A stretch of 64,000 bases of DNA from Ylistrum balloti (taxonomy: Eukaryota). The notes beneath the pieces were generated by a model. The model saw only the letters and a list, made by a program, of their open reading frames with translations, had not been told where the DNA came from and did not search any database. This document shows, one piece after another, positions 1 through 57,271 of this stretch. Each line of letters starts with the position of its first letter. Positions within the stretch are counted from its first letter, which is position 1. The stretch is from NCBI RefSeq assembly GCF_031769215.1, contig NW_026781982.1, positions 2,170,001 to 2,234,000 on the forward strand, written 5' to 3'. The position numbers and the translations under genes were made by a program.

Positions 1-1358
1 CTAAGTGTTCTTGACACAAGACAGAGATCAATCGACACACCCCTGACTTTCTGCTGATTGAAGTTTAGCTATGGTGCCCCCCTTATTTTAGATTTGACTT
101 CAACGACCATGATGCACAAAAATAAACAACATATACAACGCTGTGTCAAACTCTGATCTCTCAGCTTCATATCTAGCATACAAGCCTGAGGTTCAAGGCC
201 TCGGCAGATCGTTCATTATGATATTGTTATATGTCAAGTTAAAAGATCTGATGAATGTTGTGACCAAGGGAGAGGTACAGGTGAAGGTATATCAATATAT
301 GTAGAGGAAGAACATGGATGTCTAAATGAATTGTACTGACAGCTTTGATTCATGGCTTCATTCAGTGGGTTAAATATCAGTTAAATGTGACATATTTCAA
401 AATACAAGCAATGAAAGGAAATTCGTTGAAATTTTTTGTGGGAATCATTGAATTTGATGTCTGATCAAATGCAACACAATTAAAGTTCATAGTTATTTTG
501 GATTCATGTAGTGTAATATGTATTCAAAAACTTCGAATGTTGCCAAATCAAATATGTACTCCGATCTGAAAATTTGCCACTGAAATGTCAACATTACATA
601 TATGAGATCGCGAAACATGCAGAATCTTGCACCAAGTTAACAACGAAAATAGTAATTTCCACCAGATTGACTTAACAATCGCAATTAAATGGAAGCTGTG
701 GTGGTATAAAACATGGTGAATGTGATAAATGTGAAATTATGAACATAAATTACAAGGAAGTGTCACTAATTCACGAATAATTATGTCGGATTAAACACGT
801 GAAATCATACCATGTCTGTTTTGTTGATCTTCGAGACGAACCGACCGCCTTGTAAATGCCCGGATGTCAATAACGGGGTTCCCAAAATGAAGCATTTTGA
901 TTGGTAGATAATAAACATACATTAGTTAGACAGTTTGTAAATCCCGCTTCTGACCTGCTGAACATATCAGAAACTAGTATGATAGCTATAAGCTGACTGT
1001 TGCTTTCGTCATCTTGGGGTTAATATAATGTCATTTTCAACGTAGCCATTTATACCAAATATAACTAACAGTCGGCGTGGTAAAGTATTCGTTCTTGCTT
1101 TTGGCTTTTAAAAAGTGTTATTTCTTTATGTCAGAGACGATGAGTTCATTAAAAAATCTGCTCGTGAAGATACCGACTTTCGACTCTTGTCTTAAAGTTG
1201 TTGAAGACTAGAGTTCCACGTATATTGTTAGTTCTAACGGTTCTGGCTTTCTAATCGGGATTTTATTGGTCTTGGGTGCAAACCGATATCGCCATAAGAT
1301 TTATAAAACACTCATACAATTTAGAATTAGATACAGCAGAGCCAAACAACAAATTGAA

Positions 1359-1416
1359 CTACCTCATACAGCAATTTAGTTATACGATGACTCGTCAGTG
1401 ATGATTACGGCCTAAA
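1359..1416 (-). ncRNA. Degenerate solo copy of the 45-nt hammerhead ribozyme unit
   Basis: Minus strand reads TTTAGGCCGTAAT-CATCA-CTGACGA-GTCATCGTATAAC-TAAA-TTGCTGTA-TGAGG-TAG. This is colinear with the array unit CATCA-CTGACGA-GTCCTAGAAGGAC-GAAA-CAGCTGTA-TGATG-TAG. GAAA is mutated to TAAA and stem II is broken, so it is probably inactive. Confidence 0.55.
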
Positions 1417-1489
1417 TTATCAAGCTAAAGACCGACTGGGGAAAATGTCAACATCTATCTCAGAGGGAGGTGCACAGGCCCCATAATTC

Positions 1490-4120
1490 AGTAGTTACAT
1501 GCACGGGGATGTTTCTCCCGTGTAAACTCACGACTGTCACATGCACGGAGATGTTTCTACCGTGTAAACTCACGACTGTCACCAGCAAGGGAATGTTGCT
1601 CCCAATAAATTTACGACTGTCACCTCCACGGGGATGTTTCTCCCGTGTAAACTCACGACTGTTACATACACGGGGATGTTTCTCCCGTGTAAACTCACGA
1701 CTGTTACATACACGGAGATGTTTCTCCCGTGTAAACTCACGACTGTTACATGCACGGCGATGTTACTCCCGTTTAAACTCACGACTGTCACCTGCACGGC
1801 GATGTTTCTCCCGTGTAAACTCACGACTGTCACCTGCACGTGGATGTTACTCCCGTGTAAACTCACGACTGTTACATACACGGGGATGTTTCTCCCGTGT
1901 AAACTCACGACTGTCACATGCACGGAGATGTTTCTACCGTGTAAACTCACGACTGTCACCAGCAAGGGGATGTTGCTCCCAATAAATTTACGACTGTCAC
2001 CTCCACGGGGATGTTTCTCCCGTGTAAACTCACGACTGTCACCTCCACGGGGATGTTTCTCCCGTGTAAACTCACGACTGTCACATGCACGGAGATGTTT
2101 CTACCGTGTAAACTCACGACTGTCACCAGCAAGGGGATGTTGCTCCCAATAAATAAATTTACGACTGTCACCTCCACGGGGATGTTTCTCCCGTGTAAAC
2201 TCACGACTGTCACCTCCACGGGGATGTTTCTCCCGTGTAAACTCACGACTGTTACATGCACGGCGATGTTACTCCCGTTTAAACTCACGACTGTCACCTG
2301 CACGGCGATGTTTCTCCCGTGTAAACTCACGACTGTTACATGCACGGCGATGTTACTCCCGTTTAAACTCACGACTGTCACCTGCACGGCGATGTTTCTC
2401 CCGTGTAAACTCACGACTGTCACCTGCACGTGGATGTTACTCCCGTGTAAGCTCACGACTGTCACCTCCACGGGGATGTTTCTCCCGTGTAAACTCACGA
2501 CTGTTACATGCGCGGGGATATTTCTCCTGTGTAAACTCACGACTGTCACCCCCACGGGGATGTTTCTCCCGTGTAAACTCACGACTGTCACATGCACGGA
2601 GATGTTTCTACCGTGTAAACTCACGACTGTCACCAGCAAGGGGATGTTGCTCCCAATAAATTTACGACTGTCACCTCCACGGGGATGTTTCTCCCGTGTA
2701 AACTCACGACTGTCACCTCCACGGGGATGTTTCTCCCGTGTAAACTCACGACTGTTACATGCACGGCGATGTTACTCCCGTTTAAACTCACGACTGTCAC
2801 CTGCACGGCGATGTTTCTCCCGTGTAAACTCACGACTGTTACATGCACGGCGATGTTACTCCCGTTTAAACTCACGACTGTCACCTGCACGGCGATGTTT
2901 CTCCCGTGTAAACTCACGACTGTCACCTGCACGTGGATGTTTCTCCCGTGTAAGCTCACGACTGTCACCTCCACGGGGATGTTTCTCCCGTGTAAACTCA
3001 CGACTGTTACATGCGCGGGGATATTTCTCCTGTGTAAACTCACGACTGTCACCCCCACGGGGATGTTTCTCCCGTGTAAACTCACGACTGTCACATGCAC
3101 GGGGATGCTTCTCCCGTGTAAACTCACGTCCGTCACCAGCACGGGGATATTTCTCCTTTGTAAACTCACGACTGTCACCTCCACGGGGATGTTTCTTCCG
3201 TGTAAACTCACGACTGTCACCTCCACGGAGATGTTTCTCCTGTGTAAACTCACGACTGTTACATACACGGGGATGTTTCTCCCGTGTAAACTCACGACTG
3301 TTACATGCACGGCGATGTTTCTCCCGTGTAAACTCACGACTGTCACCTCCACGGAGATGCTTCTCCCGTGTAAACTCACGACTGTCACCTCCACGGAGAT
3401 GTTTCTCCCGTGTAAACTCACGACTGTTACATACACGGGGATGCTTCTCCCGTGTAAACACACGACTGTTAAATGCACGGCGATGTTTCTCCCGTGTAAA
3501 CTCACGACTGTCACCTGCACGTGGATGTTTCTCCTGTGTAAACTCACGACTGTTACATACACGGGGATGTTTCTCCCGTGTAAACTCACGACTGTTACAT
3601 GCACGGCGATGTTTCTCCCGTGTAAACTCACGACTGTCACCTCCACGGAGATGCTTCTCCCGTGTAAACTCACGACTGTCACCTCCACGGAGATGTTTCT
3701 CCCGTGTAAACTCACGACTGTCACCTCCACGGGGATGCTTCTCCCGTGTAAACACACGACTGTTAAATGCACGGCGATGTTTCTCCCGTGTAAACTCACG
3801 ACTGTCACCTGCACGTGGATGTTACTTCCGTGTAAACTCACGACTGTCACCTCCACGGAGATGTTTCTCCTGTGTAAACTCACGACTGTTACATACACGG
3901 GGATGTTTCTCCCGTGTAAACTCACGACTGTTACATGCACGGCGATGTTTCTCCCGTGTAAACTCACGACTGTCACCTCCACGGAGATGCTTCTCCCGTG
4001 TAAACTCACGACTGTCACCTCCACGGGGATATTTCTCCCGTGTAAACTCACGACTGTTACATACACGGAGATGTTTCTCCCGTGTAAACTCACGACTGTT
4101 ACATGCACGGGGATGTTTCA
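1490..4120. repeat. 42-bp minisatellite, about 62 copies (TGTTTCTCCCGTGTAAACTCACGACTGTCACCTCCACGGGGA), with higher-order variant blocks
   Basis: Direct tandem periodicity. It explains all 14-aa-repeat ORFs in 1470-4175, which are not credible proteins. Confidence 0.97.
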
Positions 4121-9274: not shown

Positions 9275-11335
9275 TGGGAAGGCATTGTGGGTGTGGCAGT
9301 CAGTGAGGAGATAGGACCCCTGGCCACTTACACACCCCATTACAAAACGTGTGGAAAGGCATTGTGGGTGTGGCAGTCAGTGAGGAGATAGGACCTCTGG
9401 CCACTTACACACCCCATTAGAAAACGTGTGGGAAGGCATTGTGGCTGTGGCAGTCAGTGAGGAGATAGGGCCCCTGGCCACTTACACACCCCGTTACAAA
9501 ACGTTAAGAAAGGCATTGTGGGTGCGGCAGTCAGTGAGGAGATAGGGCCCCTGGCCACTTACACACCCCGTTACAAAACGTTTAGAAAGGCATTGTAGGT
9601 GCGGCAGTCAGTGAGGAGAAATGGACCCCTGGCCACTTACACACCCCATTACAAAACGTGTGGTAAGGCATTGTGGGTGTGGCAGTCAGTGAGGAGAAAA
9701 GGACCCCTGGCCACTTACCCATTACAAAACGTGTGGGAAGGCATTGTGGGTGTGGCAGTCAGTGAGGAGATAGGGCCCCTGGCCACTTCCACATTACCAC
9801 ATTGCAAAACGTACACACCCCATTGGGAAGGCATTGTGGGTGTGGCAGTCAGTGAGGAGATAGGGCCCCTGGCCACTTACACACCCCGTTACAAAACGTT
9901 TAGAAAGGCATTGTAGGTGCGGCAGTCAGTGAGGAGAAATGGACCCCTGGCCACTTACACACCCCATTACAAAACGTGTGGTAAGGCATTGTGGGTGTGG
10001 CAGTCAGTGAGGAGAAAAGGACCCCTGGCCACTTACCCATTACAAAACGTGTGGGAAGGCATTGTGGGTGTGGCAGTCAGTGAGGAGATAGGGCCCCTGG
10101 CCACTTCCACATTACAAAACGTGTGGGAAGGCATTGTGGGTGTGGCAGTCAGTGAGGAGATAGGGCCCCTGGCCACTTACACACCCCATTACAAACGTTT
10201 AGAAAGGCATTGTAGGTGCGGCAGTCAGTGAGGAGATAGGGTCCCTGGCCACTTACACACCCCGTTACAAAACGTTTAGAAAGGCATTGTAGGTGCGGCA
10301 GTCAGTGAGGAGATAGGGCCCCTGGCCACTTACACACCCCGTTACAAAACGTTTAGAAAGGCATTGTAGGTGCGGCAGTCAGTGAGGAGAAATGGACCCC
10401 TGGCCACTTACACACCCCATTACAAAACGTGTGGTAAGGCATTGTGGATGTGGCAGTCAGTGAGGAGAAAAGGACCCCTGGCCACTTACACATTACAAAA
10501 CGTGTGGGAAGGCATTGTGGGTGTGGCAGTCAGTGAGGAGATAGGGCCCCTGGCCACTTACACATTACAAAACGTGTGGGAAGGCATTGTGGGTGTGGCA
10601 GTCAGTGAGGAGATAGGGCCCCTGGCCACTTACACACCCCATTACAAACGTTTAGAAAGGCATTGTAGGTGCGGCAGTCAGTGAGGAGATAGGGTCCCTG
10701 GCCACTTACACACCCCGTTACAAAACGTTTAGAAAGGCATTGTAGGTGCGGCAGTCAGTGAGGAGAAATGGACCCCTGGCCACTTACACACCCCGTTACA
10801 AAACGTTTAGAAAGGCATTGTAGGTGCGGCAGTCAGTGAGGAGAAATGGACCCCTGGCCACTTACACACCCCATTACAAAACGTGTGGTAAGGCATTGTG
10901 GATGTGGCAGTCAGTGAGGAGAAAAGGACCCCTGGCCACTTACACATTACAAAACGTGTGGGAAGGCATTGTGGGTGTGGCAGTCAGTGAGGAGATAGGG
11001 CCCCTGGCCACTTACACATTACAAAACGTGTGGGAAGGCATTGTGGGTGTGGCAGTCAGTGAGGAGATAGGACCCCTGGCCACTTACACATTACAAAACG
11101 TGTGGGAAGGCATTGTGGGTGTGGCAGTCAGTGAGGAGATAGGGCCCCTGGCCACTTACACACCCCATTACAAACGTTTAGAAAGGCATTGTAGGTGCGG
11201 CAGTCAGTGAGGAGATAGGGTCCCTGGCCACTTACACACCCCGTTACAAAACGTTTAGAAAGGCATTGTAGGTGCGGCAGTCAGTGAGGAGATAGGGTCC
11301 CTGGTCACTTACACTCCCCTTTCCTATACGTGTGG
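9275..11335. repeat. 77-bp minisatellite, about 27 copies, with shorter deletion variants
   Basis: CAGTGAGGAG recurs at 9301 and 9378. Unit is GGCATTGTGGGTGTGGCAGTCAGTGAGGAGATAGGGCCCCTGGCCACTTACACACCCCATTACAAAACGTGTGGGAA. Confidence 0.96.
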
Positions 11336-12034
11336 GAAAGTTATTGTACATACGGAGGGATAAGTCAGTCACACAAGGACTGACCAACGTGGGGCCACTG
11401 AAAGCCTTCTCTGAAATTTCACCGTCGTTATGTGATACCTAGACTATTTTCTTTTCTAATAAACTCTATTATCATATTTATCGTGTTATATCACCACGCC
11501 CCCTACCTTCCTGGTAACTCCGCCTAACACTGGTAACGTCACCAATAAACGGTTCGATACGATGGACAATTAACGATACCGTTTAACCGCACTTATCGCC
11601 ATTCTTAAATAGATTGTATACATAGCGGATAGAAGATTTCCGATTAACCGACAGCAAGATTTCACACTGCACGAGTAAACACAACGGAAGTTGATCGCTC
11701 ACGATTTGTTTATTTGTTCTTTAACGTAATGTAATATATATTTGTTTGTTGATCAGTTCCATCCCACCTCGGATAAGCCCAATGGATATTCGTCAGAAAT
11801 ATCGGAAATGAAAATCCTGGTTCGAAGCTTTATCAGCTTAACCATGAATTAAAATCTTTAAAACCAGTACACTGTTGAATGTTGTTGTAGTAAAGTTTTA
11901 GTTGATCTCTGAAATCTTTGCTGCACCAAATCCTGGCTTATTCCAAGTTTGTATTTGATTTCTATTTTGATGAGTTAGTAAATTTATTTTCCTCTCTTGC
12001 CTCTTAACCTCCTTATTTTAAAACACTTAGGCCA

Positions 12035-12617
12035 TAGCATCACTAACGAGTCCCCAAAAGTACGAATGAGCTGTATGATGTAGCATCACTAACGAGTCCT
12101 AGAAGGATAAAACAGTTGTATGATGTAGCATTACTGACGAGTCTTAGAAGGACGAAACAGCTGTTTAATGTAGCATTACTGACGAGTCCTATAATGACGA
12201 AACAGCTGCGTGATGTAGCATTACTGACGAGTCCGAGAAAGACAAACAGCTGTAAGATGTAGCATCACTGACGAGTCATAGAAGGACGAAACAGCTGTAT
12301 GATGTAGCATTACTGACGAGTATTAGAAGGACGAAACAGCTGCATGATGTAGCATCACTGACGAGTCTTAGAATGACGAAACAGCAGTATGATGTAGCAT
12401 CACTGACGGTCATAGAAGGACGAAACAACTGTGTGATGTAGCATCACTGACGAGTCCTAGAATAACGAGACAGCGGTATGATGTGACACCACTGACGAGT
12501 CCTAGAAGGACGAGACAGCTGTATGATGTAGCATTATTGACGAGTCCTAGAATGACGAGACAGTGGTATGATGTGACACCACTGACGAGTCCTAGGCGAA
12601 ACAAGTTTATGATGTAG
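12035..12617 (+). ncRNA. Tandem array of about 13 hammerhead-ribozyme units (45 nt), mostly decayed
   Basis: Same unit as 16000-16648. The core CTGACGA...GAAA...GTH is intact in a few units (e.g. 12121-12170). Most others carry core lesions such as CTAACGA, GAGA or GCA. Confidence 0.85.
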
Positions 12618-13086
12618 TTTATTTCATTGTTTGAAACTAATTCTAAATTTATATCGAAATCTACTATTTTCCTACCCGTGTGTCATTGATACAATCATTA
12701 CAGGAGATGAACATGACGAACTAAGATGACAAATCTTTAAGGATTTCTTATGTGTCAAGACGGTAACGGCCTACCCTGTGACGGATTTACGACATCGATA
12801 TCGATACGCTATCTTTAGCCGATACACGGATATGTAAGTAAGTATATATCTACACAGGTTAAACAATTATATCAAATTTACATATTACACGTCAAAATGA
12901 ACCAGTATAAATAAGAGTCAATGACAGAGTTTTCATTTCTGGACCTGTATGAAAGAGGACACTTCAAATTGTGCGTGTCACAGAAAATTATATATGAATA
13001 ACTTTTTTTCGACGGACAAGTTCATTTGAAAAAAAAGAAATTTGGAAAACTGAATAACTATTTCTTGAAATTAACTTACCTGGACT

Positions 13087-13126: not shown

Positions 13127-14710
13127 ATGTATGTTAGAATTCCGCAGGCGCTTCTATATCTAACAATCTGCCTCATATTGGTGGGTAATTTCTCTACATC
13201 CGGGGCCTTTGTGTGTCCGAGCGTGTGCCGATGTCATTACAACGTCACTGTATCATGCGATGTAGGTCTACAAACGATTCCGAGAGATATTTCGGAACTC
13301 ACCAAATCACTGCATCTGGCTGGGAATGTTACGTTACACAACAGTTTCCATCGCGTCCGTCACACTGATTTACCTAACTTGTCCGATCTCCGTCACTTTA
13401 CGTTCAGTTTTAATGACATAGAGTCTATCGAAGACTACACATTTAGCCAATTTAAAGAACTCCGGCAACTGAAATTGAACAACAACAACATCAAAAAGGT
13501 TGGACCAGAAACATTCAGCGGGCTTTCAAAACTGGAAGTTCTAGATCTGTCTGGAAATTTGGGTATAAAAATCCAAGACGGAACATTCCGTGTGCTTCCT
13601 TCGCTCAAAGAATTGTATATGGGAGAGATAAACCTACAGGAATTAGATGTTGCTGTTTTTGACGGTTTAAATGATTTGGAAGTTTTGGACATACATGGTA
13701 ATTTGATAAAAAAATTTGATATACACCGTATGAATTTATTTCCTACGTTGAATGTATTGGACATTTCCTCAAACTCATTGATGATGGTTGATGACAGTGT
13801 ATGGGATACCATGTCTAAACTACAAACAATATATATTGGTGGGAACCCATGGCAATGCAATTGTCTGATGAAAAGAATAAAGCGTTCTCCAAGGCTCAGA
13901 AATATCACAGAGGCCGTGATTTGTGCTGGACCAAGTCAACTTCAATACTTGCCACTTTCGCGTGTCTCTGAATCCGATTTACAATGTCAACCCCCGAAGA
14001 TTTTAACGTGTGCCACGATTCCGACACGTATAACGACGGGGGACGTCTTACAAATTTCCTGCAATCTATCTGGAGATCCATTCCCGTCCATAGAATGGAC
14101 AACACCAAGTGGTGACCGGCTGTATCCGTACAATTCTACCCTAGGATCGTTTTCTGTGAGTGACAATGGATCCTTAACTGTATTTTCTAGCTCGATGATA
14201 GACAGTGGGAAATGGACAATGAAATTATCGAACCATGCAGGGATGGTTGAGAGAGAATTCACAGTTGATATTCAAGCCATAACACCAACTACGAGCCCGC
14301 GAGTTATAATTACACCATTTCCAACCAAACACACCATAACGGCGCAAACAACCAAGATGCAACGACCACCTGAAAACCATACGCCAAGTAAAAATATATA
14401 TGGTGTAGCTTCATCAACACCCAAATCGTCTTCTTTGATCACAACGCCATTACAGATTCCTCTAATAACACAGATGAACGCCAAGTTATCACAGCAAACA
14501 ATGGCCGACTTCAATCGCCAAGGTAACGAAGAGTCGACAAGCATGGGTTATGTAGGTATTATAGTGGCCTCTGTAGTGGGCGGCTGTAGTTTAATCATCA
14601 TCACGACATTGCTTATACTTCTGTATAAGTGTATCTCGGCCAAGAACAGAGTCGGAACTTCCTTTCCGGAAAATACAAGGCCTACCAATACTACCAATGA
14701 GTTAGTTTGA
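13127..14710 (+). CDS. Intronless LRR-Ig type I membrane protein (AMIGO/LRIT/ISLR/Kekkon-like architecture), 527 aa
   Basis: Signal peptide, LRR-NT (CPSVCRC...VSC), about 8 LRRs (e.g. LKLNNNNI, LDLSGN, LDIHGNLI) and LRR-CT (GGNPWQCNC...C...C). These are followed by an I-set-like Ig (ISCNLSGDPFPSIEW...GSL...DSGKW), a Thr/Pro/Ser stalk, a TM (VGIIVASVVGGCSLIIITTLLILLY) and a short tail. Confidence 0.93.
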   Translation: MYVRIPQALLYLTICLILVGNFSTSGAFVCPSVCRCHYNVTVSCDVGLQTIPRDISELTKSLHLAGNVTLHNSFHRVRHTDLPNLSDLRHFTFSFNDIESIEDYTFSQFKELRQLKLNNNNIKKVGPETFSGLSKLEVLDLSGNLGIKIQDGTFRVLPSLKELYMGEINLQELDVAVFDGLNDLEVLDIHGNLIKKFDIHRMNLFPTLNVLDISSNSLMMVDDSVWDTMSKLQTIYIGGNPWQCNCLMKRIKRSPRLRNITEAVICAGPSQLQYLPLSRVSESDLQCQPPKILTCATIPTRITTGDVLQISCNLSGDPFPSIEWTTPSGDRLYPYNSTLGSFSVSDNGSLTVFSSSMIDSGKWTMKLSNHAGMVEREFTVDIQAITPTTSPRVIITPFPTKHTITAQTTKMQRPPENHTPSKNIYGVASSTPKSSSLITTPLQIPLITQMNAKLSQQTMADFNRQGNEESTSMGYVGIIVASVVGGCSLIIITTLLILLYKCISAKNRVGTSFPENTRPTNTTNELV

Positions 14711-15072: not shown

Positions 15073-15515
15073 GTTCCCGTTACCATGACAACGATCGAGT
15101 GAATATGTGTGATATCGTAAGGTCCCGTTACCATGACAACGATCGAGTGAATATGTGTGATATCATAAGGTCCCGTTACCATGACAACGATCGAGTGAAT
15201 ATGTGTGATATCGTAAGGTCCTATTACCATGACAATGATCGAGTGAATATATGTGATATCGTAAGGTCACGTTACCATGGCAATGATCGAGTGAATATGT
15301 GTGATATCGTAATGTCCCGTTACCATGACAATGGTCGAGTGAATATGTGTGATATCGTAAGGTCCCGTTACCATGACAACGATCGAAGGAATATGTGTGA
15401 TATCGTAAGGTCGTGTTACCATGACAATGATCTAGTGAATATACAAGGTCCCGTTACAATGACAATGATCTAGTGAATATTTAAGGTTCTGTTACCATGA
15501 CAAAGATCTAGTAAA
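15073..15515. repeat. 48-bp minisatellite, about 9 copies, in the presumptive 3' UTR of LRR-Ig gene 1
   Basis: Unit GTTACCATGACAACGATCGAGTGAATATGTGTGATATCGTAAGGTCCC; corresponds to the 16-aa-repeat ORF artefact. Confidence 0.93.
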
Positions 15516-15792
15516 TACGAATGTCATGGTTTATATGATGAAATTGACATGTGTATGTCTGATGGACACATTGTGACATCAGTCCATCACAAACATGGGC
15601 AGTGTGTTATATATATATCATTACGTATTGTTTTTAATCTATTCACCACTTATCTTTTGTATTCTGTAATAATTACATCAACAAATTCTGCATAATATGT
15701 TTTATACAGTTTAGTGTACATTGTTTTTGTTAATTTTTATCGTTTATGTAATTCACTTAATTAACTTTTGTTTATGTTTACTTTATATTAAA

Positions 15793-15798: not shown

Positions 15799-15999
15799 CA
15801 TTGTTGTTTTCATGATTTTGAATTGATTATTATTTTTATGTAATAGTGATCTTCTATATAGTGACGATCTATCTTAACCTGTGGAAAGTTGATTTAGAAT
15901 TTATTGAATGATTTGCCAGTTCACACCTCCATCTTATTTGGACGATTATTTTGACTATTCTGGATTTTTTTTGGAAGTTTCTTCAACGACTTGTAGAAA

Positions 16000-16648
16000 A
16001 AGGACGAAATAGTTGTATGATGTAGCATCACTGACGAGTCCTAGAAGGACGAAACAGTTGTATGATGTAGCATCACTGACGAGACCTAGAAGAACGAAAC
16101 AGCTGTATGATGTAGCATCACTGACGAGTCCTAGGACGAAACAGTTGTATGATGTAGCATCACTGACGAGACCTAGAAGGACGAAACAGCTGTATGATGT
16201 AGCATCACTGACGAGTCCTAGAAGGACGAAACAGTTGTATGATGTAGCATCACTGACGAGACCTAGAAGGACGAAACAGCTGTATGATGTAGCATCACTG
16301 ACGAGTCCTAGAAGGACGAAACAGCTGTATGATGTAGCATCACTGACGAGTCCTAGAAGGACGAAACAGCTGTATGATGTAGCATCACTGACGAATCCTA
16401 GAAGGACGAAACAGTTGTATGATGTAGCATCACTGACGAGACCTAGAAGGACGAAACAGCTGTATGATGTAGCATCACTGACGAGTCCTAGAAGGACGGA
16501 ACAGTTGTATGATGTAGCATCACTGACGAGACCTAGAAGGACGAAACAGCTGTATGATGTAGCATCACTGACGAGTCCTAGAAGGACGAAACAGCTGTAT
16601 GATGTAGCATCACTGACGAGACCTAGAAGGACGAAACAGCTGTATGAT
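16000..16648 (+). ncRNA. Tandem array of 14 hammerhead-ribozyme units (45 nt: TGATG-TAG-CATCA-CTGACGA-GTCC-TAGAA-GGAC-GAA-ACAGCTGT-A)
   Basis: All conserved hammerhead core nucleotides are present (CUGANGA, GAAA, NUH = GUA). Stem I is 5 bp, stem II is 4 bp, and palindromic ACAGCTGT can form an 8-bp stem III between neighbouring units. Units at 16285, 16330 and 16555 are consensus-perfect. Confidence 0.92.
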
Positions 16649-17074
16649 ACAGTTTAATTCATAATTTGGCTTTACCGTTTCAAACTCTGCATTGAAGCAT
16701 ATTTCACATTTAGTGACGTAACAAATGCCTTTGACCTTTTGACCTTGATTGGAACTAGTCCACCATTCCCTGTAGATTTTTTACATTTCATTCGATTATT
16801 TCGGATTTTACTCTGTCTCCTCCTTGGTTTCAGGACTATATGCCCTTAACGTTACCGACGAAACAATTGTATGATCCAGTTGGCTTTTCTTACTTTACTT
16901 GTTTTAAACGTGCTATTCAATAAACTATCAACGCATTAATTTTAGTATCTCTTTTAGCCATTCTTAAATACACCTGAATATACGGTTTAATCTGGCACGG
17001 AAGAACGACGAGACGAATCCGGGAGTTTATAGACATTTCAGTTGAAGTGTTGAAGTCAATGCAAATGAAATCTT

Positions 17075-19498
17075 AACACCGCATTCCCCACCACACCAAG
17101 AAAAAAACAAAGCCCAACCAAACCAAGAAAACAACCAAACCTAGAAACATCACAATCCCCCACCATACCTGAAGCAGCATAATCCCCACCACACCAAGAA
17201 AACAACCTAACCTAGAAACATCACAATCCCCCACCACACCAAGAAAACAACCTAACCTAGAAACATTACAATCCCCACCATACCTGAAGCAGCATAATCG
17301 CCTACCACACCAAGAAAACAACCTAACCTAGAAACATCACAATCCCCCACCACACCAAGAAAACAACCTAACCTAGAAACATCACAATCCCCACCATACC
17401 TGAAAACAACCTAAGCATAATCCCCACCACACCAAGAAAACAACCTAACCTAGAAACATCACAATGAAGCAGCATAATCCCCACCACACCAAGAAAACAA
17501 CCTAACCTAGAAACATCACAATCCCCCACCACACCAAGAAAACAACCTAACCTAGAAACATCACAATCCCTCACCATACCTGAAGCAGCATAATAATCCC
17601 CACCACACCAAGAAAACAACCTAACCTAGAAACATCACAATCCCCACCATACCTGAAGCAGCATAATCCACACCACACCAAGAAAACAACCTAACCTAGA
17701 AACATCACAATCCCACACCACACCAAGAAAACAACCTAACCTAGAAACATCACAATAGTTAATCCGCGTGCTTTTCTGAAGTAGCATAATCCACACCACA
17801 CCAAGAAAACAACCTAACCTAGAAACCCCACCACACCAAGAAAACAACCTAACCTAGAAACATTACAATAAACAACCTAACCTAGAAACATCACAATCCC
17901 CCACCACACCAAGAAAACAACCTAACCTAGAAACATCACAATCCCCCACCACACCAAGAAAACAACCTAACCTAGAAACATCACAAACCCCCACCACCAC
18001 CAAGAAAACAACCTAACCTAGAAACATCCATCCCCCACCACACCAAGAAAACAACCTAACCTAGAAACATCACAATCCCCCACCACACCAAGAAAACAAC
18101 CTAACCTAGAAACATCACAATCCCCCACCATACCTGAAGCAGCATAATCCACACCACACCAAGAAAACAACCTAACCTAGAAACATCACAATCCCCCACC
18201 ATACCTGAAGCAGCATAATCCACACCACACCAAGAAAACAACCTAACCTAGAAACATCACAATCCCCCACCATACCTGAAGCAGCATAATCCACACCACA
18301 CCAAGAAAACAACCTAACCTAGAAACATCACAATCCCCCACCACACCAAGAAAACAACCTAACCTAGAAACATCACAATCCCCCACCACACCAAGAAAAC
18401 AACCTAACCTAGAAACATCACAATCCCCCACCACACCAAGAAAACAACCTAACCTAGAAACATCACAATCCCCCACCACACCAAGAAAACAACCTAACCT
18501 AGAAACATCACAATCCCCCACCACACCAAGAAAACAACCTAACCTAGAAACATCACAATCCCCCACCATACCTGAAGCAGCATAATCCACACCACACCAA
18601 GAAAACAACCTAACCTAGAAACATCACAATCCCCCACCACACCAAGAAAACAACCTAACCTAGAAACATCACAATCCCTCACCATACCTGAAGCAGCATA
18701 ATCCCCACCACACCAAGAAAACAACCTAACCTAGAAACATTACAATCCCCACCATACCTGAAGCAGCATAATCCCCACCACACCAAGAAAACAACCTAAC
18801 CTAGAAACATCACAATCCCCCACCACACCAAGAAAACAACCTAACCTAGAAACATCACAATCCCCCACCAATGAAGCCCCCACCACACCAAGAAAACAAC
18901 TAAATCCCCCACCACACCTGAAGCAGCATAATCCCACCACACCAAGAAAACAACCTAACCTAGAAACATCACAATCCCCCACCACACCCACACCAAGAAA
19001 CACCACACCAAGAAAACAACCTAACCTAGAAACATCACAATCCCCCACCACACCAAGAAAACAACCTAACCTAGAAACATTACAATCCCCACCATACCTG
19101 AAGCAGCATAATCCCCACCACACCAAGAAAACAACCTAACCTAGAAACATCACAATCCCCACCATACCTGAAGCAGCATAATCGCCTACCACACCAAGAA
19201 AACAACCTAACCTAGAAACATCACAATCCCCCACCACACCAAGAAAACAACCTAACCTAGAAACTCCCCCACCACACCAAGAAAACAACTAAACTTAGAA
19301 CATCACAATCCCCACCATACCTGAAGCAGCATAATCGCCTACCACACCAAGAAAACAACCTAACCTAGAAACATCACAATCCCCACCATACCTGAAGCAG
19401 CATAATCCCCACCACACCAAGAAAACAACCTAACCTAGAAACATCACAATCCCCACCATACCTGAAGCAGCATAATCCCCACCACACCAAGAAAACAT
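17075..19498. repeat. C/A-rich compound minisatellite: 45-bp unit (CCCCACCACACCAAGAAAACAACCTAACCTAGAAACATCACAATC) interspersed with a ~27-bp unit (CCCCACCATACCTGAAGCAGCATAATC)
   Basis: CCAAG recurs at 18301 and 18346. The sequence is unrelated to the 45-bp ribozyme unit. Confidence 0.96.
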
Positions 19499-41934: not shown

Positions 41935-42920
41935 AAATTTATTGTGACAGGATGTGTACAATGTCAGTAAGTCAGCAGATGTCTCAGAAATTTATCGTGA
42001 CAGGATGTGTACAATGTCAGTAAGTCAGCAGATGTCTCAGAAATTTATCGTGACAGGATGTGTACAATGCAGCAGACAGTAAGTCAGCAGACGTCTCAGA
42101 AATTTATCGTGACAGGATGTGTACAATGCAGCAGACCGTAAGTCAGCAGATGTCTCAGAAATTTATCGTGACAGGATGTGTACAATGCAGCAGACAGTAA
42201 GTCAGCAGATGTCTCAGAAATTTATTGTGACAGGATGTGTACAATGTCAGTAAGTCAGCAGATGTCTCAGAAATTTATCGTGACAGGATGTGTACAATGC
42301 AGCAGACAGTAAGTCAGCAGATGTCTCAGAAATTTATCGTGACAGGATGTGTACAATGCAGCAGACAGTAAGTCAGCAGATGTCTCAGAAATTTATCGTG
42401 ACAGGATGTGTACAATGCAGCAGACAGGAAGTCAGCAGATGTCTCAGAAGTTTATCGTGACAGGATGTGTACAATGCAGCAGACAGGAAGTCAGCATGTC
42501 TCAGATTTATCGTGACAGGATGTGTACAATGCAGCAGACAGGAAGTCAGCAGATGTCTCAGAAATTTATCGTGACAGGATGTGTACAATGCAGCAGACAG
42601 GAAGTCAGCAGATGTCTCAGAAATTTATCGTGACAGGATGTGTACAATGCAGCAGACAGGAAGTCAGCAGATGTCTCAGAAATTTATCGTGACAGGATGT
42701 GTACAATGCAGCAGACAGGAAGTCATCAGATGTCTCAGAAATTTATCGTGACAGGATGTGTACAATGCAGCAGACAGTAAGTCAGCAGATGTCTCAGAAA
42801 TTTATCGTGACAGGATGTGTACAATGCAGCAGACAGTAAGTCAGCAGATGTCTTAGAAATTTATCGTGACAGGATGTGTACAATGCAGCAGACAATAAGT
42901 CAGCAGATGTCTCAGAAATT
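41935..42920. repeat. 59-bp minisatellite, about 16 copies
   Basis: Unit ATCGTGACAGGATGTGTACAATGCAGCAGACAGTAAGTCAGCAGATGTCTCAGAAATTT; one-base shift per 60-nt line. Confidence 0.96.
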
Positions 42921-46584: not shown

Positions 46585-48175
46585 TAAATTGTACCAACAT
46601 CACATTCTCAGATATATTTATATATCCAGCACACCCTGTAATATCCTGTCACTCCAAATTGTACCAACATCACATTCTCAGATATATTTATATATCCAGC
46701 ACACCCTGTAATATCCTGTCACTCCAAATTGTACCAACATCACATTCTCAGATATATTTATATATCCAGCACACACACTGTAATATCCTGTCACTCCAAA
46801 TTGTACCAACATCACATTCTCAGATATATTTATATATCCAGCACACACACTGTAATATCCTACCACTCCAAATTGTACCAACATCACATTCTCAGATATA
46901 TTTATATATCCAGCACACACACTGTAATATCCTACCACTCCAAATTGTACCAACATCACATTCTCAGATATATTTATATATCCAGCACACTGTAATATCC
47001 TACCACTCCAAATTGTACCAACATCACATTCTCAGATATATTTATATATCCAGCACACACACTGTAATATCCTGTCACTCCAAATTGTACCAACATCACA
47101 TTCTCAGATATATTTATATATCCAGCACACCCTGTAATATCCTACCACTCCAAATTGTACCAACATTACATTCTCAGATATATTTATATATCCAGCACAC
47201 TGTAATATCCTACCACTCACATTCCAGATATATTTATATATTGTAATATCCTGTCAACATTGTACCAACATCACATTCTCAGATATATTTATATATCCAG
47301 CATACCCTATAATATCCTACCACTCCAAATTGTACCAACATCACATTCTCAGATATATTTATATATCCAGCACACCCTGTAATATCCTACCACTCCAAAT
47401 TGTACCAACACATTCTCAGATATATTTATATATCCAGCCACTGTAATATCCTACACAAATTTTACCAACATCACATTCTCAGATATATTTATATATCCAG
47501 CACACACCCTGTAATATCCTACCACTCCAAATTGTACCAACATCACATTCTCAGATATATTTATATATCCAGCACACACCCTATAATATCCTACCACTCC
47601 AAATTGTACCAACATCACATTCTCAGATATATTTATATATCCAGCACACACACTGTAATATCCTGTCACTCAAAATTGTACCAACATCACATTCTCAGAT
47701 ATATTTATATATCCAGCACACCCTGTAATATCCTACCACTTCAAATTGTACCAACATTACATTCTCAGATATATTTATATATCCAGCACACTGTAATATC
47801 CTACCACTCCAAATTGTACCAACATCACATTCTCAGATATATTTATATATCCAGCACACACCCTGTAATATCCTACCACTTCAAATCGTACCAACATCAC
47901 ATTCTCAGATATATTTATATATCCAGCACACACCCTATAATATCCTACCACTCCAAATTGTACCAACATCACATTCTCAGATATATTTATATATCCAGCA
48001 CACACACTGTAATATCCTGTCACCCCAAATTTTACCAACATCACATTCTCAGATATATTTATATATCCAGCACACACCCTGTAATATCCTACCACTCCAA
48101 ATCGTACCAACATCACATTCTCAGATATATTTATATATCCAGCACACTGTAATATCCTATCACTCCAAATTTTAC
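46585..48175. repeat. ~70-bp minisatellite (68-72-bp variants), about 23 copies, 3' of RNF121
   Basis: Unit TTGTACCAACATCACATTCTCAGATATATTTATATATCCAGCACACCCTGTAATATCCTACCACTCCAAA. Confidence 0.95.

Positions 48176-48848: not shown

Positions 48849-57271
<8,423 letters not shown>

What the first reader, a model, noticed from the sequence alone, without database searches (positions are those of the whole stretch)
16000..16648. A 45-bp minisatellite whose entire repeat unit is a hammerhead ribozyme
Seen: 14 head-to-tail copies of TGATG-TAG-CATCA-CTGACGA-GTCC-TAGAA-GGAC-GAA-ACAGCTGT-A with no spacer; every base falls in a stem, loop or the catalytic core. Established: CUGANGA, GAAA and NUH are the hammerhead core. 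Metazoan hammerheads are known in newt satellite 2, Schistosoma SM-alpha, Penelope-like terminal repeats and non-LTR retrozymes, whose units normally carry much extra sequence. Inference: palindrome ACAGCUGU of unit n can pair with that of unit n+1, so 16276-16328 folds as a type III-like hammerhead. It has an 8-bp stem III, a 5-bp stem I with a UAG loop and a 4-bp stem II with a UAGAA loop, and cleavage is predicted after 16284 (GUA). Loop 1 starts with U and loop 2 ends with A, fitting the known U-A loop-loop contact that accelerates natural hammerheads. Cleavage would release 45-nt 5'-OH / 2',3'-cyclic-phosphate RNAs that RtcB could circularise. This would be a near-minimal retrozyme, and rolling-circle reverse transcription of it would directly generate such a minisatellite.
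Basis: partly seen in the sequence, partly recalled or inferred. Interest (0 to 1): 0.93.

Follow-up and report, generated by a model that had tools for sequence, protein, structure and literature searches.

The report
Hammerhead ribozyme array inside a retroelement
The 45-bp repeat really is a string of hammerhead self-cutting RNA motifs, but it is the expanded ribozyme module of a common ~350-400-nt mobile element that grew as ordinary repeat DNA, not a free-standing 45-nt "mini-retrozyme".

Summary
Window 16000-16648 is 14.5 head-to-tail 45-bp units, and the consensus unit is a complete hammerhead. Rfam type III scores 48.4 bits against a cut-off of 48.5 (E 1.7e-9). The proposed three-way junction is the MFE fold, and GUA with cleavage after 16284 is placed correctly.

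- Only 5 of 14 units are fully canonical.
- The array is not a naked satellite. About 14,000 units genome-wide sit in fixed register between conserved arms: a left arm of ~265 nt and a right arm of ~95 nt, present in at least 3,500 copies.
- The element has no inverted termini or poly-A, is often 5'-truncated, and its 3' end runs straight into its 5' start. [quoted passage not shown] The "type III" fold is the known double-hammerhead pairing between neighbouring units.
- Inside arrays the core drifts as fast as the loops, and dead variants were amplified in place. Growth therefore did not need cleavage.

No transcription or cleavage evidence exists for this species. The scan has found this family repeatedly elsewhere in this genome. 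A 2026 preprint already lists retrozyme units down to 51 bp.

The parts
16000..16648 (+). Array B: 14.5 tandem 45-bp hammerhead units (one of 42 bp). It shows A/B alternation with 90- and 270-bp higher-order periodicity. 5 units are canonical.
16276..16328 (+). Best inter-unit (type III-like) hammerhead. Helix III is 16276-16283 paired with 16321-16328. Predicted cleavage is after A16284.
15940..15999 (+). Diverged end of the element's left arm, running into a partial first unit that starts in loop 2.
   Evidence: by comparison with the consensus; weak similarity only
16649..16727 (+). Right arm of the element that carries array B.
   Evidence: (BLAST to arm consensus, 16650-16688) and reading
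16768..16848 (+). Left arm (proximal ~80 nt) of a second, 5'-truncated copy lying head to tail after the first.
16849..16885 (+). Truncated ribozyme remnant of that second copy. It lacks CUGANGA and the helix II 5' strand, the same deletion form seen in L038 and L039.
16886..16960 (+). Right-arm-like sequence of the second copy.
   Evidence: reading against the consensus
12035..12595 (+). Array A: an older array of the same unit, about 12.5 copies at 84% matches, with 179-bp higher-order period. Most units are inactivated.
12615..12696 (+). Right arm of the element that carries array A. It ends in a diverged form of the family's 3' terminus.
   Evidence: read against the consensus
1298..1488 (-). 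Solo, 5'-truncated copy of the same element: left arm, one decayed ribozyme (1391-1403 keeps CATCACTGACGAG), right arm. It abuts the 42-bp satellite.

Best explanation
Window 16000-16648 is the tandemly expanded ribozyme module of a dispersed, non-coding, non-autonomous retroelement. With a single ribozyme the element would be about 350-400 nt.

Anatomy of the element: a left arm of ~265 nt, then n hammerhead units (n from 1 to more than 40), then a right arm of ~95 nt.

The ancestral module is a typical metazoan type I hammerhead. Helix I is 5-6 bp and helix II is 4 bp. Helix III is only 2 bp, capped by the palindromic loop AGCU, so it becomes stable only when two copies pair.

Duplicating that 42-nt ribozyme with a 3-nt linker (TAG) put copies back to back. 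Neighbouring palindromes can then form an 8-bp helix III, and each junction scores as a type III hammerhead.

Shown here: the motif, the fold, the fixed register between conserved arms, the copy numbers, the 3'-to-5' junction, and the amplification of dead units.

Inferred: (1) the parent element spreads by reverse transcription of more-than-unit-length or circular RNA, probably using PLE enzymes as proposed for non-LTR retrozymes; (2) the arrays then grew and homogenised at the DNA level by slippage or unequal exchange, independent of catalysis; (3) if transcribed, only the canonical units (5-6 of 14 here) could cut, giving 45-nt multiples.
For: Motif and fold:
- Rfam type III 48.4 bits, E 1.7e-9.
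- The MFE equals the proposed junction.
- Family members elsewhere pass Rfam cut-offs: type III 50.3 bits, type I up to 39 bits, including terminal units next to the right arm.

Dispersed family:
- 13,988 hits to the 32-nt core at <=2 mismatches, control 0.
- 3,554 right arms, control 0.

Fixed register between conserved arms in about 30 independent loci.

Retroposon traits:
- Variable 5' truncation.
- No terminal inverted repeats; arm GC 0.35-0.38.
- The element's 3' end lies directly before its 5' start in 3 of 4 full-length copies.
- The same junction occurs as a fixed sequence 272 times, against 1 for the control.
- Whole-unit head-to-tail pairs occur in L038 and in the window.

Catalysis-independent growth:
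- Shared inactivating changes within arrays: C3>U 20/34, A6>C 26/40, G12>C 16/23, G8>A 14/23, C3>G 10/13.
- Within-array variation of the core is 5.2%, against 4-7% elsewhere in the unit.
- Lag identity in array B is 0.978 at 90 and 0.992 at 270, against 0.959 at 45.
- The 5'/3' junction of the element also forms 47-bp arrays.

Literature:
- The short palindromic helix III and dimer action are the norm for metazoan hammerheads (PMC4209133).
- Mussel retrozymes are 350-390 bp (PMC7229834).
Against: - No reverse transcriptase or GIY-YIG ORF was found beside any sampled array, and no autonomous partner was identified. The PLE link rests on layout and literature only.
- Complete dimers (ribozyme, full spacer, ribozyme) with exact anchors were not found, so classic ~400-nt retrozyme circles may be rare or absent.
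- Higher-order repeats and runs of dead units could in principle also come from reverse transcription of multi-unit circles bounded by active units. The DNA-level inference is therefore parsimony, not proof.
- My loci were chosen through a perfect 32-mer, which biases the sample towards young arrays.
- No RNA data exist for this species, and the RNA-library hits are contigs from other organisms.
Confidence: 0.75

Rival explanations
1. The 45-nt unit is itself a minimal retrozyme: transcripts self-cleave to 45-nt RNAs, RtcB circularises them, and rolling-circle reverse transcription of the circle creates and extends the minisatellite.
For: The unit is a complete hammerhead and adjacent units can form a stable helix III. 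The 90-bp A/B periodicity could reflect a two-unit circle. Related organisms carry a 49-nt ribozyme-only tandem in RNA-library contigs.
Against: Arrays sit in one fixed register between conserved arms. Dead variants dominate many arrays. There is no core constraint within arrays. A non-ribozyme module of the same element also forms arrays. A lone 45-nt unit is predicted to misfold, with the core paired to the palindrome. The 4-unit ensemble is diffuse, with MFE frequency 0.0035.
Confidence: 0.07
2. The carrier is a composite DNA transposon of the kind common in bivalves (tandem-repeat-containing MITE or Helitron/Helentron-associated satellite). The ribozyme is a passenger with no role in mobility.
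For: The arm-(tandem repeat)n-arm architecture with variable n resembles DTC84-type elements (PMC3879986). No RT lies nearby.
Against: There are no terminal inverted repeats above the shuffled background. 5' truncation is frequent. The 3' end is duplicated directly before the 5' start, as in PLE-type insertions (PMC8557442). Helitron termini were not specifically tested.
Confidence: 0.12
3. The arrays have been taken over by the host. For example, they could act as self-cleaving elements that trim or destabilise transcripts of the LRR-Ig gene they bracket (13127-14710, same strand).
For: Both arrays and the gene lie on the + strand. The window holds four copies of the element, against about 0.35 expected from 3,554 copies in 648.5 Mb.
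Against: Array A is heavily decayed and array B is about 60% non-canonical. The region is generally rich in minisatellites. There are thousands of such arrays with no sign of constraint. No transcript data exist.
Confidence: 0.05

Closest known systems
Animal non-LTR retrozymes (Cervera & de la Pena 2020, PMC7229834; Li et al. 2026 preprint, 10.64898/2026.07.22.740005)
   Same: Non-coding, low-GC, non-autonomous repeats that carry a type I hammerhead with a short palindromic helix III. They are tandem-capable. The size with one ribozyme (~350-400 nt) matches mussel units (350-390 bp). The unit closes on itself, 3' end into 5' end.
   Different: Here the tandem repeat is the 45-bp ribozyme alone, inside the element. 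Whole-unit tandems with two good ribozymes are rare. CircRNA is not shown. The described units are 150-450 bp, and 51 bp is the shortest consensus listed in the preprint.
Minimal hammerheads of Penelope-like elements (Cervera & de la Pena 2014, PMC4209133)
   Same: Helices I and II are closed and helix III forms only between two copies (dimer). The ribozyme lies near the 3' end. Insertions are partial tandems with a 3' tail and frequent 5' truncation. Thousands of copies occur per genome.
   Different: PLE min-HHRs have a 6-8-bp helix II with an unpaired base, while this one has the canonical 4-bp helix II. No RT/GIY-YIG ORF is attached.
Classical hammerhead satellites: newt satellite 2, Schistosoma Sm-alpha, cave-cricket pDo500
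   Same: Tandem DNA whose transcripts carry a hammerhead that needs a neighbouring copy (double hammerhead) for a stable helix III.
   Different: From my own knowledge, those units are ~330-500 bp with much non-ribozyme sequence. Here there is none beyond a 3-nt linker.
Tandem-repeat-containing MITEs and Helentron-borne satellites of bivalves (e.g. DTC84, PMC3879986)
   Same: A dispersed composite with conserved arms and a central array of variable length that expands at the DNA level.
   Different: No terminal inverted repeats. The element shows retroposon-type truncation and a 3' tail, and its core repeat is a ribozyme.

Membership tests
Hammerhead ribozyme (Rfam clan CL00010) | Conserved core CUGANGA ... 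GAAA with a G10.1-C11.1 pair and an NUH cleavage triplet | tested here: met
   The consensus unit and 5-6 of 14 window units have all of these; the triplet is GUA.
Hammerhead ribozyme (Rfam clan CL00010) | Score at or above Rfam's curated gathering threshold | tested here: inconclusive
   Window units score 48.4 against 48.5 (type III) and 32.7 against 34 (type I), E 1.7e-9 and 3.5e-6. Family members elsewhere pass at 50.3 and up to 39 bits.
Hammerhead ribozyme (Rfam clan CL00010) | Site-specific self-cleavage | not testable with these tools
   Only assembled contigs were available, which cannot show RNA ends. In the 2026 preprint only 1 of 9 predicted dimers cleaved in vitro.
Type III hammerhead topology | Helices I and II closed by loops, helix III open | tested here: met
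   Met only across unit junctions in arrays. In solo or terminal units the same ribozyme is type I (hits at L050, L042, L034).
Non-LTR retrozyme | Tandem repeats in which consecutive units each carry a complete hammerhead | tested here: met
   Met formally at the 45-bp level, e.g. units 16293 and 16338. At the level of the whole ~370-nt unit it occurs only as rare, partly deleted pairs.
Non-LTR retrozyme | Non-coding, low GC, no LTR/PBS/PPT | tested here: met
   Arm GC is 0.35-0.38. No coding ORFs with Pfam domains were found. PBS and PPT were not specifically searched.
Non-LTR retrozyme | Expression as self-cleaved linear and circular RNA | not testable with these tools
   No RNA run of this species was found. 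Contigs of other organisms hold a 49-nt variant only.
Penelope-like element (autonomous) | ORF with RT and GIY-YIG endonuclease | tested here: not met
   None of 9 long ORFs near the arrays has such domains. At most this is a non-autonomous dependant.
Penelope-like element (insertion style) | Partial tandem or 3' tail before the 5' end, with 5' truncation | tested here: met
MITE / DNA-transposon composite | Terminal inverted repeats | tested here: not met
   Local alignment of the termini scores 5-9, against a shuffled mean of about 6 and maximum of 10-13.

The most novel reading that the evidence does not exclude
Transcripts of these arrays are cut in vivo into 45- or 90-nt RNAs that are ligated into the smallest natural ribozyme-derived circles. 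Multi-unit circles are occasionally reverse transcribed and recombine into resident elements. On this reading, RNA-level rolling-circle copying contributes to array growth and to the higher-order periodicity.
Probability: 0.08. Interest if true: 0.8.

Novelty: new variant of a known kind. Interest (0 to 1): 0.4.

Why it matters
The finding shows how a ribozyme-only minisatellite can arise: a standard dimer-dependent animal hammerhead, duplicated with a 3-nt linker, becomes a chain in which every junction is a type III-like ribozyme.

That gives a compact natural template for testing how neighbouring hammerheads compete for a shared helix III. It also allows a test of whether 45-90-nt self-cleaved RNAs or circles exist in animals.

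It adds a scallop or bivalve family to the retrozyme/PLE-hammerhead group, and it cautions that counts of hammerhead motifs in genomes can be inflated by DNA-level repeat expansion of largely inactive copies.

It does not, on present evidence, reveal a new kind of mobile element.

Tried and rejected
- A BLAST-type search of the window's own genome with two units found nothing, because simple repeats are skipped. I replaced it with pattern searches.
- A gapped pattern meant to catch whole-unit tandems was swamped by the arrays themselves and is uninformative.
- An exact-anchor search for ribozyme, ~350-nt spacer, ribozyme found 0.
- My first core pattern had the wrong spacing.
- A Pfam scan of long ORFs near arrays gave only low-complexity or coiled-coil noise and no RT or endonuclease.
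- RNA evidence: 15 RNA or possible-RNA runs hold only the repeat unit, as contigs and from other organisms, so no ends, strand or level could be read.
- The 42-bp satellite at 1500-4119 was checked as a possible diverged ribozyme array and rejected. It merely abuts a solo element copy.
- Species identity: earlier notes name the scallop Ylistrum balloti. I could not verify this. The neighbouring protein is in NCBI nr without a name, and papers gave no assembly match.
- Literature searches found no description of hammerhead arrays in scallops.

Full report
**Observation.**

TRF reports a 45-bp period with 14.5 copies, 94% matches and no indels at 16000-16648. The unit-by-unit listing shows thirteen 45-bp spacings and one of 42 bp.

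ACAGCTGT occupies 16276-16283 and A17 is 16284, so the predicted GUA cleavage site is correctly placed.

- The default Rfam scan lists nothing, but only because the intact units score 48.4 bits against the Hammerhead_3 gathering score of 48.5. The E-value is 1.7e-9 with a full-length match and all pairs standard.
- In the other register, Hammerhead_1 gives 32.7 bits against 34.
- RNAfold gives the proposed three-way junction as MFE and centroid for 16276-16328: -17.5 kcal/mol, z -2.97.

It needs one qualification.
- Five units are fully canonical.
- One has loop 2 shortened to 2 nt.
- Six 'B' units have an A.A mismatch at 10.2-11.2 in helix II.
- One has G10.1>A, and one has the core change A13>G.

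**What the array is part of.**

The 32-nt core of the unit occurs 13,988 times in the 648.5-Mb assembly at <=2 mismatches. The reversed control gives 0. Hits lie on both strands and on many contigs.

In about 45 arrays that I fetched, n ranges from 1 to more than 40 units. The arrays share conserved non-repetitive flanks.

- The left arm ends in ...TTTAGGCCCTTAG, directly before CATCA.
- The right arm starts CAGTTTAATTCATT directly after TGATG.
- Arrays therefore begin and end in one fixed phase. This is the type I register of the ribozyme, with TAG as the only linker.
- The right-arm 24-mer occurs 3,554 times, control 0.

Full-length left arms are about 265 nt, and many copies are 5'-truncated. 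The right arm is about 95 nt and ends ...TTTTGTACAATC without poly-A.

- The termini show no inverted repeat above the shuffled background.
- The two arms together are 300-340 nt with GC 0.35-0.38.
- With one ribozyme the element would be about 350-385 nt.

In 3 of 4 full-length copies the element's own 3' end sits directly upstream of its 5' start.

Genome-wide, the junction TTTTGTACAA-(13 nt)-AGGTGGTAG is a fixed sequence found 272 times, against 1 for the control, at dozens of dispersed loci.

Locus L038 is a head-to-tail pair of whole units, with the upstream ribozyme partly deleted.

The window shows the same layout: array, right arm (16649-~16727), left arm of a truncated second copy (16768-16848), ribozyme remnant (16849-16885), then right arm.

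A third, solo copy lies at 1298-1488 on the minus strand. The older array at 12035-12595 has its own arms.

No RT or GIY-YIG ORF lies beside any sampled array.

**How this compares with what is known.**

Cervera and de la Pena (PMC4209133) describe the typical metazoan hammerhead as type I.
- Helix I is about 6 bp and helix II is 4 bp.
- Helix III is 1-2 bp, capped by a 2-4-nt palindromic loop.
- It is inactive alone and active as a dimer when two copies lie in tandem.

The unit here matches this exactly: G-CAUCA/UGAUG-C, GUCC/GGAC, and AC-AGCU-GU.

Consistent with that, a lone 45-nt unit is predicted to misfold, with the core paired to the palindrome.

Terminal units next to the right arm pass the Rfam type I cut-off elsewhere in the genome, and one inter-unit junction passes the type III cut-off.

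The 'type III-like' ribozyme is therefore the double-hammerhead pairing seen from inside a very tight tandem. It is not a separate class.

Several traits match PLE-style insertions (PMC8557442) and non-LTR retrozymes. These are the element's size, low GC, non-coding nature, partial-tandem insertion with a 3' tail, and 5' truncation. Mussel retrozymes have 350-390-bp units (PMC7229834).

A 2026 preprint (10.64898/2026.07.22.740005) derives retrozymes from PLE terminal regions. It lists family consensus lengths from 51 to 972 bp and found cleavage in only 1 of 9 tested dimers.

**How the array grew.**

Across 494 in-phase units from 32 arrays, variation from the array's own consensus is 5.2% at core positions. 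It is 4.2-6.5% in loops and 4.2-7.3% in helices. Units therefore drift neutrally once in an array. Only 31% are canonical.

Many arrays are dominated by one inactivating change that must have been copied in place:
- C3>U in 20 of 34 units
- A6>C in 26 of 40
- G12>C in 16 of 23
- G8>A in 14 of 23
- C3>G in 10 of 13

In the window array, identity is higher at lags 90 (0.978) and 270 (0.992) than at lag 45 (0.959). The six helix-II-defective B units were propagated as part of that higher-order repeat.

The element's 5'/3' junction, which is not a ribozyme, forms its own ~47-bp arrays on other contigs. The window itself is full of unrelated 25-77-bp minisatellites.

Together these findings favour ordinary DNA-level expansion by slippage or unequal exchange, independent of catalysis.

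They do not strictly exclude reverse transcription of multi-unit circles bounded by active units. I keep that as a low-probability rival.

**Expression.**

I laid four of them on the array with its flanks; all are assembled contigs.
- The contigs cover only repeat units and never this locus's unique flanks.
- Many continue into a different linker (TGATG-TCCCTAA-CATCA), which makes a 49-nt unit.

That variant is absent from this genome. These contigs therefore come from other organisms that have their own ribozyme-only tandem, with the same core, helices and loop 2.

This shows that the ribozyme is conserved beyond this genome and is present in RNA libraries of relatives. It says nothing about ends, strand, level or cleavage, and nothing about this species.

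A 4-unit transcript has a diffuse predicted ensemble, with MFE frequency 0.0035 and long-range pairings between the nearly self-complementary helix I segments. Efficient ordered cleavage is therefore not a given.

**Verdict.**

The sequence observation is right and the motif is real. It is best read as the expanded, partly decayed ribozyme module of an abundant retrozyme/PLE-like non-autonomous element. It is not a self-sufficient 45-nt retrozyme.

The arrangement, a repeat unit reduced to the ribozyme plus three bases, is a little more extreme than the shortest catalogued unit (51 bp), and I found no description of it in bivalves.

I rate it a new variant of a known kind, of moderate interest.

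The scan has already reported this family several times elsewhere in this genome. Those notes reached similar conclusions, which I re-derived here independently for the flanks, the dead-unit amplification and the double-hammerhead reading.

The host is said in those notes to be a scallop. I could not verify the species.

Noticed in passing
window 13127-14710 (+): An intronless 527-aa ORF with LRR_8 and Ig (I-set) domains lies between the two same-strand ribozyme arrays, 532 bp after array A and 1290 bp before array B. The exact protein is in NCBI nr. The window holds four copies of the element against about 0.35 expected.
   Followed up: partly
G000 contig C185:231352-236010 (also C233:1197078-1198590, C246, C105): A ~47-bp satellite built from the element's own 3'-end/5'-start junction (TTTTGTACAATC...AGGTGGTAGACACTGCTGGTGGA). 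So a second, non-ribozyme module of the family also expands into arrays.
   Followed up: partly
window 1500-4119: A large 42-bp satellite (62 copies, 88% matches) with an internal hairpin. It abuts the 5'-truncated end of a solo element copy at 1298-1488 (-). It has no hammerhead core.
   Followed up: partly
window 16849-16885; L038, L039, L034 left flanks: A recurrent truncated ribozyme form in which the left-arm end is fused to loop 2 (...GCCC|TAGAAGGACGAAAC...). This is consistent with deletion between the direct repeats CCCTTAG and TCCTAG.
   Followed up: partly
RNA-library contigs of coded organisms A and B: A 49-nt version of the ribozyme-only tandem with a 7-nt loop 1 (UCCCUAA/UCCCUAG). 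The linker resembles the left-arm end, which suggests an independent duplication with a different breakpoint. It is absent from this genome.
   Followed up: partly
window 9275-11347, 15075-15517, 17113-19497, 41935-42920, 46586-48175, 52137-53015: The window is unusually dense in minisatellites with 25-77-bp units (TRF), so tandem expansion of short modules is a general property of this region.
   Followed up: no
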